Positions 6,041 to 63,607 are shown, counted from the first letter of the stretch. The stretch: DNA of 64,000 nt from Saccostrea echinata (GCF_033153115.1 NW_026889809.1:3596001-3660000); one strand, 5' to 3'. Program-made: numbers and translations. Notes: generated from the sequence alone by a model not told the origin.

Positions 6041-7774
6041 ATGAACAAGACAACCATCTTAAACGTGTCTGTAGATTGCATCAGACCAGCTACAAACTTT
6101 ACCGAACACAAGAATGCAGCACCTGTGACGCTTCTATTCTTATTTGGAGTTGCTGGAAATGCCATAGCTCTTGTTGCTTTATGCTGTTCTGCTAAAACTC
6201 ATAAATGGCGCCCATTTTACCGATTTGTATGCGGACTTGCCATTTCTGATGGTGGAGGAATTTTAGCATCCTACCCTTTTGCTTTGTCCCGATACATATC
6301 TGATTTTACATATGAATTTTCTCCAGATCTGTGTGCTTTCCTAGGATTTGTGTTCATGTTTACTTTAATGTCATCTGCTATGATCGTGTGTTGTATGTCA
6401 TTTGACAGATTTTTTGCCACTTTCTTTCCATATTTATACAACTCTACAACAAAAGAACGCCGGACAAATATTATACTGGGCACCGTGTGGAGTCTTTCGG
6501 GACTTCTCAGTAGTTTACATTTGTTCGGACTCGGATCAAGCAAACTGATGTATCCCGGTTCATGGTGTTTTCTCAATTTTATTCATGTAAGACCCGAATG
6601 TCCCGAAGATAGACTGAACATGATATATTCCTACATTTACGCCACTACCGGCGTAATAATAGTCCTTTTAACCGTTTCATTAAACACGCTGGTTGTCTTC
6701 TTCTTCATCAGGAACAGATTTGTCAGGACAACCCGAAACCAAAGAGATCTTCACGTGATTGTGTTCCTTTTGATTATTGTTATAGTGTTTACGTCCTGCT
6801 GGGCACCTCTCATGGTAAATCTTGGAGAAAGTTTTCATTTTTATCAATTGATTAAGAACAATATTCAGGAATATTCGAAATCCAACAGCGATTAATTCTA
6901 AAATAGAATACATTTACCCTCCATGACATACATGTAGAAAAGTTTGTTTTACGATTTACTTTTATAATCATTCTTTATTATTCCATCCAGAAACATGAAT
7001 TTGTCTACCTTTATCCATTATTAGCTAAAGAGAATCAAAATTTATCACAAAATTTGATTTTTTAGGAAGATATACACAGTTCTTGAATAAGTAGTTACAA
7101 ATTAAAGCTTATATTTACATTGCGTTATTTTCTTTAAAACTTATTCCTCAAATACCAACGGCACTATGAATGAATCTTCTTGAATACCGTATATTTCATT
7201 AGTTACCCAGGCACACAGGTAGAAAAGTTGTATATTTTGATTCAAAGTCAGTTTGGTTACACCCAAAGTGAATTTAAATTTGAAAAAAGGAAGAAAGGAT
7301 ATTATAAACCTCTTAGTATAGATGTTTATGTATCAGTTTTATTGCTGTGTCATATAATTCATCCTTCAACATGTCTTATGTCATATATCACACAGGTATA
7401 CAACAACAGGATTTTTGAGACAAATACTATCAAAATTTTTAATAGGTACTACCTGTATTAATCCTGAGTAAGATTTTAAAATACAACAATTTGTGTTTCT
7501 TATCAGATGTATTTTTTAATTATCACTTTATCAGGTAAACATCCTTCAGCATGCCTCTGGTGCAGTAACGGGAGAGGGCGATACTGAGCTCAACTTGCTG
7601 AGGTTTGGTGTGTTAAACTCAGTCCTAGATCCCTGGATATACATTTTGTTTCGAAAAGAATTTCTTTTGTTTGTGCTTCGTGCTCTGGAAAGTGTAACTA
7701 GAAGAAAATTCAAGCTTACAAAGAAGTTATCTGGAGATTGTGCAGCCCATGTTGTCTCTTTTAATGGACATTAA
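6041..7774 (+). CDS. PTGER4-like: Prostanoid (EP4-like) GPCR, copy 1; exons 6041-6814 and 7535-7774; 337 aa
   Basis: TM1 FGVAGN, TM2 CGLAISD, ECL2 YPGSWCF. Donor ATG|GTAAAT at 6815, acceptor TCAG|GTAAAC at 7534. Hand-translated exon 2 (not in ORF track): VNILQHASGAVTGEGDTELNLLRFGVLNSVLDPWIYILFRKE...NGH*, with the TM7 Arg and DPWIY motif typical of prostanoid receptors. Confidence 0.92.
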
Positions 7775-8843
7775 TTGGTCTCTTGTATGATGGTCAGATA
7801 TAATGATATATGAAATAATGATAATTTTATTTCAGTTTTTCTTAATCCATATATCTTGTTTAAAAATTTTTGAACACTAATTTCTACTAAAAAGGATTAT
7901 TTAACATGGAAATAAAGTTTTGGTTAATAATTATCTCATCATTAATTGATGTCATATTGATGTAATGTTCCTTCGTTATCGTTGGTACTATGTTCTAAAT
8001 AAGTTTTAATGAAGACAAATACAAGCGACATTATGAAAAAAATATTAATAGTTTTCAAGAACAAGTTACAAACCATGAAAATTATGATTTAAAAGAAACA
8101 GTTGATTTAAACTTCGTACTTAGACCTGTTATCTTCTGAAGAAAAAAAGGTGAACTGTGATCGATAGCATATAAATCCTTAAACACATTCAAATTGTGAA
8201 CAGGGAAAAAAACAAGGACCCCTAGAGATATCAGAGATGGAATCAGGTACCTTGGAGAACTAAGCATCCCGTGTTGACAGCTGGCGTAAGCCCTCAGTAT
8301 TGATCAGGTAAACGGAGCAATCTTTAGTCAAAATTTTTACAAAAAACAATAATTAACCTCGCAAATTGGTATGAATCATTTCCAAACGAGGCCATTTTAA
8401 CTACCAAAAGGTTTGCGATATGATGACATAAACGAGATTGTTGAAAGCCCTTTACCACCTTATTTATCAGTTGTCTTCCTCGGTTTTAAAACTGATCATA
8501 CTCAGAGTATTTTCTTAAGTACCGAATCGAATTGGAGAAAGAAACATCATATGCAGGTGATTGTAGAATGACACTGAATAAATAAAGGAACTTAGCGATG
8601 GAAAAGTCGTCCTACTTGTCATATAGTTTAGTTGTTCGTTGGTGATTAACATCTATAGTCAGTAAAACATCCAAATGCATGATTAAAATAGACATGGTAG
8701 CCTTACCTTGTCTTTTATTTCAAGTTCTTAAGGATATATCGAGTCGACATACGAATGAAAATAAAATATACGAAAAAAAAATGCATAAATTGATATTCAT
8801 TTGACTGAATTTGAACAGAAATGACATTCATGATAAATTCCTA

Positions 8844-9357
8844 NNNNNNNNNNNNNNNNNNNNNNNNNNNNNNNNNNNNNNNNNNNNNNNNNNNNNNNNN
8901 NNNNNNNNNNNNNNNNNNNNNNNNNNNNNNNNNNNNNNNNNNNNNNNNNNNNNNNNNNNNNNNNNNNNNNNNNNNNNNNNNNNNNNNNNNNNNNNNNNNN
9001 NNNNNNNNACAAAAGAATCCTCCGTAAAGCTTTAGCGCTTTCATTTAAAATCTTCAGAAGTTTTACAATGTAAAGTAATGTAAAGCTTCTGAAGATTTTA
9101 AATGAAAGCGCTAAAGCTTTATGGAGGATTCTTTTGTTTTCTTTTTATATTTTTTTATTATTGTAATCCGATTACTGAGNNNNNNNNNNNNNNNNNNNNN
9201 NNNNNNNNNNNNNNNNNNNNNNNNNNNNNNNNNNNNNNNNNNNNNNNNNNNNNNNNNNNNNNNNNNNNNNNNNNNNNNNNNNNNNNNNNNNNNNNNNNNN
9301 NNNNNNNNNNNNNNNNNNNNNNNNNNNNNNNNNNNNNNNNNNNNNNNNNNNNNNNNN
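8844..9357. other. N runs at 8844-9008 and 9180-9357 (third run at 34835-35001)
   Basis: 165, 178 and 167 Ns. Confidence 0.95.
9009..9138. repeat. Near-perfect palindrome (~58-bp arms) between two N runs
   Basis: ACAAAAGAATCCTCCGTAAAGCTTTAGCGCTTTCATTTAAAATCTTCAGAAG followed by its reverse complement. Confidence 0.9.
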
Positions 9358-61252: not shown

Positions 61253-61708
61253 TTCCAACAGTCCTGCTTGACACCAGAATGAAAAGGCTAGTGCCTAATG
61301 ATCTTTATTTCACAACAGTCAGAATTCTCTTATTTCATTGAATTTTTGAAATTTGATCAAAGATTGACCAAAATGGGATCCCTAGCTAGGCTATACGCAT
61401 TTAATATTTTTATATAGTATATCTAGTTCATATACAATCAGATGTACAATTATATGTAAGAATTCGTACACGTGTTTTTCAGTAGTAATAAATATCTACA
61501 TTACATGATTGTTTTCACGACCTGTTTACTTTTGATATATATCCTTGAAATAAACGGAAAGGGAGAAGTTATTATTTATAGTCTTGTGTATTGTTTGATA
61601 GATAAATAGAACGAAGTATTCTGTATAAGCTCAGTACAAAGTCTTTACTGTGTGAAGCACTGTGAGTTTATTTAAAAAAGTGTTTGCTGTGTCAAACACT
61701 GTGAATTT

Positions 61709-63607
61709 ATGTTAATATTAACTATGAATAATGATACAGTACCAAGTGAGTTTAGTACATCTATCGTGGACGTTTCTACCCACACAATGGCAGAAACATT
61801 AACCACGGTTACAGGAGGGAAAGCTGAATCTCTCGTAAGTAATGCTGTTCCGGCCTATCTGGTGTTTGTCTTCGGAGTTGGTGGAAATATTATTGCCCTG
61901 GTGGTATTACTAGTGACTGCCAAAACTCATAACTGGCGGCCATTTTATAGGTACGTCTGTGGACTTGCGATCACGGATGGAGGTGGACTACTTATATCGG
62001 TTCCCGTATCCCTCTCTATGTACGCCTCAGAATTACAGAGAGAATTGTCTCCAACTCTATGTAACTTTCAGATGTTTTGGTATATGTTTACTCTGATGTC
62101 GTCCGCCATGATCGTTTGTGGCATGTCTTTTGACAGATTCTTCGCCACATATTATCCTTTTTACTACAACAAACCCCACAAAAAAATCCGAACTAATGTA
62201 GTTTTATTAGTCATCTGGGTACTTTCGGCGCTCATCAGCAGTTTACCTTTTTTCGGACTTGGTTCCAGTCGTAAGTTTTATCCTGGCACATGGTGTTTTT
62301 TGAATTTTATTGAAACATCCATAGAGAGCAATATAATTAACTCAATCATCTATGCTTCTATCGGCATCATCATTGTCTTTGCTACATGGACCTTCAATAT
62401 CGCAGTTATCATCTACTTTGTTTACAAGAGATACAAGAAAGAGTCCACTTGGAGCGGATGGAAAGATGCGCATGTCATAATTTTTCTCTTGTCAGTGGTG
62501 ATTCTGTTTACTTCCTGTTGGTTCCCATTAATGGTAAGAAGTTGATAATTTCAGAGATATATACATGTTATATTTTTTGTGTTAAGAATTGAAATGACAA
62601 GTTTTATGAGTTAAGATCTATTTTAATAGGATTCCTTTCAATGTTCGAAGAAAAACGTCCATTAGAAAATAATTCCGATGTTTTTTCTGCAATTATAAGA
62701 TTTTCAAGACTCTCTGTTTGATCAAAGTACCTCTGCTCAAAACAACTCTCTTCGAAAAATAAGAAAAGGGAAAAAGTCAAAAAGTAGACAATGAATATGA
62801 ATATTCAGATATGACAAAATGTCATTTGGAATCCTTATTTCTGAGATAGGTCAACCATTGAAAGATTTTGGTATATACTGTATGTCCTTTAATTTCTATG
62901 GAGATACAATATATTTTCCAGTCTTTTAAATTCATTTTACTTCAATGACAAGGACGTCCTGGACAACGATTTAATTTGTTGATATCTACGTTCTTGTGTC
63001 AAAAATAAATTATTCTAATCAAAATAAGAAATATATTGGGTCAGTTTTAATGTAAATGTAAAATGAACTCTTTTTATAAATATCATGAGGCGAAATGAAT
63101 ATACTTCATAAGGTAATATAGAAGGACCCGTCAAATAAACGTTACTCCATATGTTATTTCGAAAATGAATGTTGTATGACAAGTCACAAGAACTACGTGT
63201 ACACGATGTATTTGATTTGATCATTCTGGGACACGATACCTTTGCTTTCCTGTCAACTGTATACTCTATATCCTGGTGAAAACGCTTGTTGTCATTACTA
63301 TATACTGTACTATTTTCAGGTAAATATTCTGGGACATGCCTCATTCGCACTTCCGGAAACAGCTGGTAAAACTGAGCTTTTATTGACAAGACTGAGCATC
63401 ACAAACTCCATAGTTGACCCCTGGTTGTACCTTGTGTTCCGGGGAGAGATCTACTCTGCTGTGCTGGTCTGTGTTAGACGCATATACAGCAAGAGGAAAG
63501 CCAACATCTCAGAGAGTACTCCACACACTCTCGAAGCTCTGTCTTTAGAGACAAAGAACAAACCAGATACGGCGTCCATAAGTTCGAATGAGGGCTGCAA
63601 TGTTTAA
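61709..63607 (+). CDS. PTGER4-like: Prostanoid (EP4-like) GPCR, copy 6; exons 61709-62533 and 63320-63607; 370 aa (start could be ATG 61724)
   Basis: CGLAITD, YPGTWCF, CWFPLM|VNILGH...RLSITNSIVDPWLYLVFR; donor GTAAGA at 62534, acceptor TTTTCAG ending at 63319. Confidence 0.9.

What the first reader, a model, noticed from the sequence alone, without database searches (positions are those of the whole stretch)
6041..63607. Six-gene tandem expansion of intact prostanoid-type receptors in an invertebrate-like genome
Seen: six co-oriented open two-exon genes of 337-400 aa, ranging from near-identical (3/4) to divergent (5, 6). Known: vertebrate prostanoid receptors are mostly dispersed genes, and invertebrate prostanoid receptors are poorly characterised. 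Inferred: a lineage-specific oxylipin-sensing repertoire (immunity, spawning or dietary algal oxylipins). The array may continue past the window.
Basis: partly seen in the sequence, partly recalled or inferred. Interest (0 to 1): 0.8.

Follow-up and report, generated by a model that had tools for sequence, protein, structure and literature searches.

The report
Oyster tandem array of prostanoid-like receptors
The window holds six intact, neighbouring oyster genes for cell-surface receptors related to prostaglandin receptors. They are real and already annotated in RefSeq, and they belong to an oyster-only family of about 40 such genes whose ligands are unknown.

Summary
Observation confirmed. 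Six co-oriented, two-exon, stop-free genes of 337, 400, 354, 353, 348 and 370 aa lie at 6041-63607. All have GT/AG splice sites at the same phase-0 position after TM6.

No reading frame crosses an assembly gap. Two gaps are intergenic. The third lies in the intron of gene 4, so that gene's exon linkage rests on its S. cucullata orthologue.

Genes 3 and 4 are not near-identical: 81.5% aa identity in exon 1, 61% in exon 2, dS 0.44.

The genome is Saccostrea echinata. [quoted passage not shown]

Family assignment holds. Human prostanoid receptors, EP4 first, lead the PDB hits. The carboxylate-binding triad Y2.65 / S-T(ECL2) / R7.40 is kept in all six.

They are not EP4 orthologues. Fish EP4a and shark IP group with other, 'canonical' oyster receptors that have mollusc-wide orthologues. 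The window genes sit in a separate clade found only in oysters. It has about 40 intact-looking loci in about 10 clusters in this genome.

The array continues about 50 kb beyond the window, with 2 intact and 4 broken copies.

Ligand and expression were not tested.

The scan holds other notes on this same stretch.

The parts
6041..6814 (+). gene 1 exon 1 (258 aa, N-terminus to end of TM6)
   Evidence: ORF; Pfam 7tm_1 2.5e-29; donor GTAAAT; prefix of XP_061166016.1
7535..7774 (+). gene 1 exon 2 (79 aa plus stop; ECL3, TM7, tail)
   Evidence: acceptor TATCAG, TM7 LLRFGVLNSVLDPWIY; suffix of XP_061166016.1
12463..13251 (+). gene 2 exon 1 (263 aa)
   Evidence: best PDB hit human EP4 2.6e-31; prefix of XP_061166017.1
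13886..14299 (+). gene 2 exon 2 (137 aa plus stop)
   Evidence: at E<=1 the PDB hits are prostanoid receptors only; suffix of XP_061166017.1
14111..14297 (+). 60-nt x 3.1 tandem repeat encoding three 20-aa Ser/Thr-rich units in the gene 2 C-terminal tail
   Evidence: TRF; the S. cucullata orthologue P0001 is 41 aa shorter, about two 20-aa units, and aligns only to the first 97 residues of g2 exon 2
25946..26776 (+). gene 3 exon 1 (277 aa)
   Evidence: identical to XP_061166018.1 (P0010)
27954..28187 (+). gene 3 exon 2 (77 aa plus stop)
30333..31160 (+). gene 4 exon 1 (276 aa)
   Evidence: prefix of XP_061166019.1
31161..35261 (+). gene 4 intron (nominal 4101 nt). It holds assembly gap 34835-35001 and a minus-strand 260-aa ORF at 32306-33088.
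   Evidence: the ORF has no Pfam hit. It looks like the tail of a LINE ORF2, from my own reading of the sequence; this is not confirmed.
35262..35495 (+). gene 4 exon 2 (77 aa plus stop)
   Evidence: tblastn; acceptor TAACAG; 83% to the exon-2 part of S. cucullata orthologue P0014; suffix of XP_061166019.1
54308..55078 (+). gene 5 exon 1 (257 aa)
   Evidence: identical to XP_061166021.1 (P0022)
56154..56429 (+). gene 5 exon 2 (91 aa plus stop)
61709..62533 (+). gene 6 exon 1 (275 aa)
   Evidence: all 19 PDB hits at E<=1e-10 are prostanoid receptors, EP4 best; identical to XP_061165929.1 (P0034)
63320..63607 (+). gene 6 exon 2 (95 aa plus stop)
8844..9357 (.). two assembly gaps (8844-9008, 9180-9357) in the g1-g2 intergenic spacer
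   Evidence: no receptor-like sequence flanks them

Best explanation
The window carries six functional, tandemly duplicated genes of the oyster Saccostrea echinata. [quoted passage not shown]

The six form one clade. That clade lies inside an oyster-restricted, much expanded branch of the family: about 40 intact-looking loci in about 10 tandem clusters, with a local array of 12 loci over about 110 kb. The branch is marked by TDGGG in TM2, MSxDRF in TM3, a retained CWxP in TM6 and NS(I/V)xDPWxY in TM7. It is separate from a handful of conserved 'canonical' prostanoid receptors in the same genome, which group with vertebrate EP4/IP.

Inferred mechanism. An acidic lipid ligand (a prostaglandin-like oxylipin or other fatty-acid derivative) is anchored by its carboxylate to Tyr2.65, Ser/Thr of the ECL2 xWCF motif and Arg7.40. 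The receptor then signals through heterotrimeric G proteins. The paralogues differ in ring- and tail-contact positions, ECL2, N-termini and C-tails, which implies different ligand preference and regulation.

Shown here: gene structure, intactness, family membership, the conserved triad, purifying selection, orthology among oysters and the size of the expansion.

Inferred only: ligand class, G-protein coupling and physiological role.
For: Gene models and identity to RefSeq proteins.

Pfam 7tm_1 at 1e-29 to 1e-34 for all six exon 1s.

PDB sequence search:
- g2 exon 1: EP4 112 bits, then TP, EP3, IP, DP1; the best non-prostanoid is NTSR1 at 46 bits.
- g6 exon 1: only prostanoid receptors at E<=1e-10.
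- g2 exon 2: only prostanoid receptors at E<=1.

Triad: Y2.65, S/T-W-C-F and R7.40 are present in all six genes. R7.40 is present in every database relative where TM7 could be read, and S/T-WCF in nearly all. Its role in EP4 is given in PMC10372679.

Selection: dN/dS for g3 versus g4 is 0.26 at dS 0.44; other pairs are saturated at dS with dN 0.2-0.5.

Orthology: one-to-one orthologues in S. cucullata at 88-94% identity in exon 1, and relatives in Magallana and Ostrea.

Genome census and clusters. Array continuation.

Trees: the expanded clade has support 100 and 1.0 and holds oysters only. The vertebrate receptors sit with the canonical mollusc receptors.

Reach of searches: the canonical receptors have mollusc-wide orthologues, whereas the same kind of search with g2 found only oysters and one fish EP4a.

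Transcription in relatives: P0006 is a 364-aa protein on a 1402-nt Logan contig and carries the same exon junction. EP4-like transcripts are differentially expressed in C. virginica hemocytes (PMC13070813).
Against:
- No ligand data at all.
- The EP4 residues that hydrogen-bond the prostaglandin E-ring are replaced: T2.54 by I/L and T2.61 by A/S (PMC10372679). A classical prostaglandin is therefore not implied.
- No tree with all eight vertebrate subtypes and non-prostanoid outgroups could be built. Placement inside the prostanoid clade rests on similarity ranking, signature residues and a partial tree whose root is arbitrary; the 'outgroup' C27 locus is itself prostanoid-like.
- For g2, human FP, EP1 and EP2 score no better than NTSR1 or AT2R.
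- Restriction of the clade to oysters rests on word-based searches of limited reach.
Confidence: 0.75

Rival explanations
1. The expanded clade, including these six genes, no longer serves endogenous prostaglandin signalling. It works instead as a chemosensory or environment-sensing repertoire for waterborne acidic lipids such as algal or diatom oxylipins, conspecific spawning cues or microbial fatty acids. The canonical receptors elsewhere in the genome would handle endogenous prostanoids.
For: - Family size, tandem clusters, and pseudogenes and transposon-broken copies indicate birth-and-death evolution.
- The clade was found only in oysters.
- Separate conserved canonical receptors exist.
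- Ring-contact residues are changed while the carboxylate anchor is kept.
- Lineage-specific class A expansions in bivalves are proposed chemoreceptors (PMC11886862).
- Bivalves take up prostaglandins from the medium, and mussel gill has prostaglandin-binding sites (PMC6669704).
Against: - Orthologues are retained one-to-one across Saccostrea species, with relatives in Magallana and Ostrea. This turnover is slower than typical chemoreceptor families.
- dN/dS is well below 1.
- Family members in C. virginica are expressed in hemocytes (PMC13070813), which points to immune or paracrine use.
- No tissue expression data for this species.
Confidence: 0.2
2. They are bona fide PGE2 receptors, functional equivalents of vertebrate EP4 as the RefSeq name suggests, duplicated for dosage or tissue-specific expression.
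For: - EP4 is the best solved-structure match for g2 and g6.
- The triad is conserved.
- A Crassostrea hongkongensis 'PTGER4' was reported in immune challenge (Qu et al. 2015, cited in PMC11171025; not read here).
Against: - Fish EP4a and shark IP group with other oyster loci, not with these.
- Those canonical loci score 124-160 bits against human EP4, versus 112 for the window genes.
- EP4-specific T2.61 and T2.54 are replaced, ICL3 and the C-tail are short, and TM6 has CWxP where EP4 has CSxP.
- The paralogues are only 47-82% identical in exon 1, too divergent for simple dosage copies.
Confidence: 0.1
3. The copies are unexpressed relics or assembly artefacts.
For: - No RNA evidence could be obtained for this species.
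- The assembly has gaps here and haplotig-like twin contigs elsewhere.
- Neighbouring copies beyond the window are pseudogenes.
Against: - All 12 exons are open with consensus splice sites.
- dN/dS is 0.26 or lower.
- All functional motifs are intact.
- Orthologues are conserved at about 90% in S. cucullata and are syntenic on one contig.
- No twin of this array exists in the assembly.
- A spliced transcript of a g2 relative exists in another oyster.
Confidence: 0.03

Closest known systems
Human/vertebrate prostaglandin E2 receptor EP4 (PTGER4; PDB 7D7M, 5YWY, 8GCM)
   Same: - Best solved-structure match: 112 bits, about 35% identity over TM1-TM6.
- Y2.65 / S-T(ECL2) / R7.40 carboxylate triad.
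- xWCF in ECL2 with the disulfide Cys.
- D2.50, R3.50 and DPWxY in TM7.
- An intron at the end of TM6. Its presence in vertebrate prostanoid receptor genes is from my own knowledge and was not tested here.
   Different: - Not orthologous.
- TDGGG instead of TDLLG in TM2.
- DRF instead of ERY.
- CWxP instead of CSxP in TM6.
- T2.54 and T2.61 are replaced.
- ICL3 is about 20 residues shorter in the alignment.
- The proteins are about 100 aa shorter overall: 337-400 aa against 488 for human EP4 and 448 for fish EP4a.
'Canonical' molluscan prostanoid receptors: S. echinata C10:9040684, C10:2775906, C70:1211454, C15:4807080, C22:16257891, with orthologues in scallops, Pinctada, Mya, Dreissena, unionids and gastropods
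   Same: Same family, same intron position after TM6 and same triad.
   Different: - The canonical genes keep vertebrate-like TDL(F/I/T)G and NQILDPW motifs.
- They score 124-160 bits against human EP4.
- They are dispersed rather than clustered, and have mollusc-wide orthologues.
- The window genes belong to the oyster-only expanded clade.
Lineage-specific class A GPCR expansions of Lophotrochozoa proposed as chemoreceptors (Nath et al. 2025, PMC11886862)
   Same: Tandem clusters, a large lineage-restricted clade in Ostreida, and pseudogenised members.
   Different: - That paper's main text does not mention prostaglandin, prostanoid or eicosanoid receptors.
- Here the parent family is identifiable, and orthologues persist across oyster genera. 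The paper reports few one-to-one orthologues beyond genus level.
Crassostrea hongkongensis PTGER4 (Qu et al. 2015) and insect PGE2 receptors
   Same: Invertebrate receptors named after EP4 and linked to immunity.
   Different: These papers could not be read here. It is unknown whether the Crassostrea gene belongs to the canonical or to the expanded clade.

Membership tests
Prostanoid receptor family (class A GPCR: EP1-4, DP1, FP, IP, TP) | Rhodopsin-type seven-transmembrane domain | tested here: met
   Pfam PF00001 at 1e-29 to 1e-34 in all six exon 1s, covering profile positions 1-219; TM7 lies in exon 2
Prostanoid receptor family (class A GPCR: EP1-4, DP1, FP, IP, TP) | Closer in sequence to prostanoid receptors than to any other GPCR | tested here: met
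   g2: EP4 112, TP 73, EP3 65, IP 61 and DP1 53 bits, against 46 for the best other GPCR; FP, EP1 and EP2 fall among other GPCRs. g6: all 19 hits at E<=1e-10 are prostanoid. Exon 2: all 22 hits are prostanoid.
Prostanoid receptor family (class A GPCR: EP1-4, DP1, FP, IP, TP) | Arg7.40 in TM7 within the motif R-x4-N-x3-D-P-W-x-Y (carboxylate binding) | tested here: met
   Present in all six genes and aligned to FP LRMATWNQILDPWVY. Present in every database relative where TM7 could be read. One paralogue elsewhere, at C34, has Glu instead.
Prostanoid receptor family (class A GPCR: EP1-4, DP1, FP, IP, TP) | Tyr2.65 and the (S/T)-W-C-F motif of ECL2 | tested here: met
   Alignments: Y is invariant; SWCF in g1-g5 and TWCF in g6. 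Role taken from PMC10372679.
Prostanoid receptor family (class A GPCR: EP1-4, DP1, FP, IP, TP) | Conserved intron at the end of TM6 | tested here: inconclusive
   Present at the same phase-0 position in all six genes and in the canonical oyster paralogues where exon 2 was found. That vertebrate genes share it is my own knowledge; a literature search found no open paper.
Prostanoid receptor family (class A GPCR: EP1-4, DP1, FP, IP, TP) | Falls inside the clade in a tree with all subtypes and non-prostanoid outgroups | tested here: inconclusive
   Only fish EP4a and shark IP were available. The expanded clade is sister to the group of canonical mollusc plus vertebrate receptors, and the root is arbitrary.
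Prostanoid receptor family (class A GPCR: EP1-4, DP1, FP, IP, TP) | Activated by a prostanoid | not testable with these tools
   Needs heterologous expression and ligand assays.
EP4 orthologue (PTGER4) | Groups with vertebrate EP4 to the exclusion of other paralogues | tested here: not met
   Fish EP4a groups with C70:1211454 and C10:2775906 (support 99 and 0.92), not with the window genes.
EP4 orthologue (PTGER4) | EP4 ring-contact residues T2.54 and T2.61 | tested here: not met
   Position 2.54 is I or L; position 2.61 is A (g1-g4) or S (g5, g6) (PMC10372679).
Lineage-specific class A GPCR expansion (candidate chemoreceptors, PMC11886862) | Large lineage-restricted clade in tandem clusters | tested here: met
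   About 40 stop-free loci in about 10 clusters; only oysters in the clade.
Lineage-specific class A GPCR expansion (candidate chemoreceptors, PMC11886862) | Little one-to-one orthology beyond genus level | tested here: not met
   g1, g5 and the g3/g4 ancestor have Magallana counterparts; g2 and g6 have Ostrea counterparts.
Lineage-specific class A GPCR expansion (candidate chemoreceptors, PMC11886862) | Expression in chemosensory tissue | not testable with these tools
   No RNA run was listed.

The most novel reading that the evidence does not exclude
Oysters turned one branch of the prostanoid receptor family into a repertoire of about 40 genes. It keeps the carboxylate anchor but varies the rest of the pocket. 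It would be a lipid 'nose' for external or microbial oxylipins and fatty acids, used in settlement, spawning synchrony, feeding or pathogen sensing, and separate from the conserved receptors that handle endogenous prostaglandins.
Probability: 0.2. Interest if true: 0.65.

Novelty: new member of a known kind. Interest (0 to 1): 0.35.

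Why it matters
The six genes themselves are ordinary: intact, already modelled and already named by RefSeq.

What is not in the papers I could find is their context. They belong to an oyster-only clade of about 40 genes derived from prostanoid receptors. That clade keeps the acid-binding triad and coexists with a small set of conserved canonical receptors.

This gives a concrete, testable split for invertebrate eicosanoid biology. The canonical genes are the first candidates for endogenous prostaglandin receptors. The expanded clade is a candidate set for other acidic lipids.

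It also warns that the many 'EP4-like' labels used in oyster immune transcriptomics lump together two different groups.

Tried and rejected
- RNA evidence: the look-up of sequencing runs listed no RNA run for gene 2.
I could not fetch the 1402-nt Logan contig of P0006 to show the spliced junction at DNA level.
Only 13 of the 27 more distant paralogues were fetched, and the census of the expanded clade is approximate.
- As a result I could not collect all eight vertebrate subtypes or non-prostanoid outgroups for a decisive tree.
- Joined exon models were never sent to a search. Exons were searched separately, and full-length identity was checked only as prefix and suffix of RefSeq proteins.
- PDB sequences were not retyped into trees.
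- The C27:9927564 locus, first used as an outgroup, proved to be prostanoid-like itself. The rooting is therefore arbitrary.
- Pfam gave nothing for the 260-aa minus-strand ORF in the g4 intron or for the 123-aa ORF at 14457.
- A literature search for the conserved TM6 intron found no open paper.
- Rejected: 'near-identical 3/4', assembly duplication, and extra introns in the split copies beyond the window, which are transposon insertions without GT-AG edges.

Full report
**1. What is there**

ORF listing and tblastn of the window against its own exon peptides give exactly six exon-1 ORFs and six exon-2 ORFs. All are on the + strand, and there are no further receptor-like fragments.

Every exon 1 runs from an ATG to ...SCW(A/F)PL(M/V), followed directly by GT (GTAAAT, GTGAGA, GTAAGA or GTACTC). 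Every exon 2 begins after a pyrimidine-rich ...CAG with VNI(L/F)QHA and runs to a stop. The phase is 0 in all six. Introns are 720, 634, 1177, 4101 (nominal), 1075 and 786 nt.

I checked instead that each exon-1 translation is the exact prefix, and each exon-2 translation the exact suffix, of a database protein of the same total length.

**2. The gaps**

Gaps 8844-9008 and 9180-9357 lie in the g1-g2 spacer. Gap 34835-35001 lies in the gene 4 intron, 260 nt before the acceptor. No reading frame crosses a gap.

Three things stay unverified: the true spacer length, the true intron length, and the physical linkage of gene 4's two exons. The linkage has independent support. The S. cucullata orthologue P0014 matches g4 exon 1 at 94% and g4 exon 2 at 83%, against 61% for g3's exon 2, across one contiguous junction.

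**3. Whose genome, and is it annotated**

The window is G000:C60:3596001-3660000, on a contig of 5,712,361 nt. Proteins of Saccostrea echinata sit on a contig of exactly that length, and they equal my models:
- XP_061166016.1 (g1)
- XP_061166017.1 (g2)
- XP_061166018.1 (g3)
- XP_061166019.1 (g4)
- XP_061166021.1 (g5)
- XP_061165929.1 (g6)

[quoted passage not shown] The genes are therefore already in RefSeq under an automatic name.

**4. Family**

All exon 1s hit Pfam 7tm_1 at 1e-29 to 1e-34.

Against all PDB chains, g2 exon 1 hits:

| Receptor | Bits |
|---|---|
| human EP4 | 112 (E 2.6e-31) |
| TP | 73 |
| EP3 | 65 |
| IP | 61 |
| DP1 | 53 |
| NTSR1 (first non-prostanoid) | 46 |

FP, EP1 and EP2 score near 37-41 bits, among other GPCRs. 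For g6 exon 1, all 19 hits at E<=1e-10 are prostanoid receptors. For g2 exon 2, all 22 hits at E<=1 are prostanoid receptors.

The EP4 agonist-anchoring motif Y80(2.65)-T168(ECL2)-R316(7.40) is described in PMC10372679. It is conserved in all six genes: Y is invariant, ECL2 reads SWCF (TWCF in g6), and R sits in xxRxxxxNSxxDPWxY. R7.40 is also present in every database relative where TM7 could be read, and S/T-WCF in nearly all.

There are clear differences from EP4:
- TM2 reads TDGGG instead of TDLLG.
- TM3 reads DRF instead of ERY.
- TM6 keeps CWxP where EP4 has CSxP.
- ICL3 and the C-tail are short.
- The EP4 residues reported to hydrogen-bond the ring are replaced: T69(2.54) by I/L and T76(2.61) by A or S.

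**5. Selection and age**

g3 and g4 are 81.5% identical in exon 1, with dN 0.116, dS 0.441 and dN/dS 0.26. They are 61% identical in exon 2. Other pairs are 47-72% identical with saturated dS. 'Near-identical' is therefore wrong, and the copies are under purifying selection.

A maximum-likelihood tree of oyster relatives puts the six genes in one clade (support 97).
- S. cucullata orthologues pair with g1, g2, g4, g5 and g6. The orthologue of g3 shares a 90% cluster with it. All lie on one 795-kb contig.
- Magallana gigas proteins are sister to g1, to g5 and to the g3+g4 pair.
- Ostrea edulis proteins are sister to g2 and to the g6 group.

The array is therefore old within Ostreidae. Only the g3/g4 split is younger, falling after the Saccostrea-Magallana divergence.

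**6. Extent**

A six-frame search of the whole assembly with g2 exon 1 gave 80 matches at E<=1e-10.

On C60 the array continues downstream of the window:
- Two g6-like copies at 3662812-3672742 have an exon 1 split at identical points by insertions. One insertion of about 1.4 kb has a perfect 18-nt terminal inverted repeat flanked by TGG. The edges lack GT-AG, and there is a frameshift. These are pseudogenes duplicated as a unit.
- An intact copy lies at 3673686 (P0042).
- A copy with an in-frame TGA lies at 3685286.
- An intact copy lies at 3693755 (P0059).
- A decayed copy lies at 3709605.

None was found in the 20 kb upstream.

Other clusters lie on C24/C62, C22, C2, C53, C16, C54, C34, C62 (4.0 Mb), C10, C3 and C45. 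Some pairs are identical twins, such as C24 versus the start of C62, and C53 versus C2. These look like haplotig redundancy, so counts are upper bounds. The window's array has no twin.

**7. Two kinds of prostanoid-type receptor in this genome**

Motif reading of 37 fetched paralogues and two trees separate two groups.

(a) An expanded clade (support 100 and 1.0). It holds the window genes and most clusters, and it contains only oyster sequences.

(b) A small set of 'canonical' genes: C10:9040684, C10:2775906, C70:1211454, C15:4807080, C22:16257891, plus C45:4247851 and C27:9927564. Most have TDL(F/I/T)G in TM2 and NQILDPW in TM7. All seven group outside the expanded clade in the midpoint-rooted tree.
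- The canonical genes score higher against human EP4: 160, 143 and 124 bits.
- They group with fish EP4a and shark IP (support 99 and 0.92-0.94).
- C10:9040684 has homologues in scallops, Pinctada, Tegillarca, Mya, Dreissena, a unionid and gastropods.
- C45:4247851 has a Pinctada homologue.

The same type of search with g2 returned only Ostreidae plus one fish EP4a.

The intron after TM6 is shared by both groups wherever exon 2 was found. The locus I first used as an outgroup (C27) is itself prostanoid-like. The trees are therefore effectively unrooted within the family, and I could not obtain the EP1/EP3/FP/TP subtypes or true outgroups.

**8. How it most likely works**

Shown: these are intact, constrained prostanoid-family GPCRs with a conserved acid-binding triad and intact microswitches (D2.50, R3.50, W6.48, DPxxY).

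Inferred:
- They bind a lipid with a terminal carboxylate and signal through G proteins.
- The paralogues differ in ring- and tail-contact residues, ECL2, N-terminus (with N-glycosylation sequons) and C-tail, which points to different ligand preference and regulation.
- Gene 2 has a three-fold 20-aa Ser/Thr-rich repeat in its tail. Its S. cucullata orthologue is 41 aa shorter, about two units.

Whether the ligands are prostaglandins, other oxylipins or external cues is open. Bivalves both make prostaglandins and take them up from the medium, and mussel gill has prostaglandin-binding sites (PMC6669704). Several EP4-like transcripts differ between hemocyte populations in C. virginica (PMC13070813).

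**9. Novelty**

The genes are annotated, and lineage-specific class A GPCR expansions in Ostreida are documented in general terms (PMC11886862). That paper's main text mentions no prostaglandin, prostanoid or eicosanoid receptor.

[quoted passage not shown] I found no paper that describes the oyster-specific prostanoid-derived clade or separates it from the canonical receptors.

I rate this a new member of a known kind, of moderate-to-low interest.

**10. Limits**

- No RNA run was listed.
- The large representative search was left unused.
- Other first-stage notes claim a thioredoxin gene and a transposon in 41343-54308. I only listed ORFs there and did not test those claims.

Noticed in passing
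beyond the window: G000:C60:3662812-3672742 (L032, L036): Two g6-like copies have exon 1 split at identical points by two insertions. One insertion of about 1.4 kb has a perfect 18-nt terminal inverted repeat (GGGGGTCGTAACATAAAG) flanked by TGG on both sides. The edges lack GT-AG, and there is a frameshift near codon 259. They look like transposon-broken pseudogenes duplicated as a unit of about 6 kb.
   Followed up: partly
G000:C24:3958643-4022006 versus C62:2752-42102; C53:87956 versus C2:48952; C257 versus C53:166 kb: Receptor clusters with identical scores and zero-length branches on different contigs. This is probably haplotig redundancy in the assembly, and it inflates copy counts.
   Followed up: partly
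window 14111-14297: A 60-nt tandem repeat (3.1 copies, 95% matches) encodes three 20-aa Ser/Thr-rich units at the end of gene 2. The S. cucullata orthologue is 41 aa shorter, about two units. The terminal ...SDDGGVY(K/R)G is kept in the S. cucullata and Ostrea orthologues and in P0006, an unnamed Logan relative.
   Followed up: partly
window 32306-33088 (-), inside the gene 4 intron: A 260-aa ORF with no Pfam hit. It resembles the C-terminal part of a LINE ORF2 by eye, and it sits next to assembly gap 34835-35001.
   Followed up: partly
window 37034-38507 (-): The same ~80-aa ORF occurs three times, at 37034, 37986 and 38244, in a stretch with strong AT skew. It looks like a satellite-like tandem repeat in the g4-g5 spacer.
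   Followed up: no
window 41343-54308: Other first-stage notes claim a thioredoxin gene head-to-head with receptor 5 and an IS3EU-like transposon here. The ORF list shows only short ORFs. These claims were not tested.
   Followed up: no
G000:C34:5741061 (L047): A paralogue of the expanded clade has Glu in place of Arg7.40 (GIEMATTNSIIDPWIY) and an intron of only about 93 nt. It may have lost carboxylate binding.
   Followed up: no
G000:C45:4247851 (L049): This conserved relative branches at the base of the expanded clade in one tree and among the canonical receptors in the other. It has a Pinctada homologue at 55%, and its oyster orthologue cluster holds 514 member sequences from run assemblies, which suggests a widely sampled and probably well-expressed gene.
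   Followed up: partly
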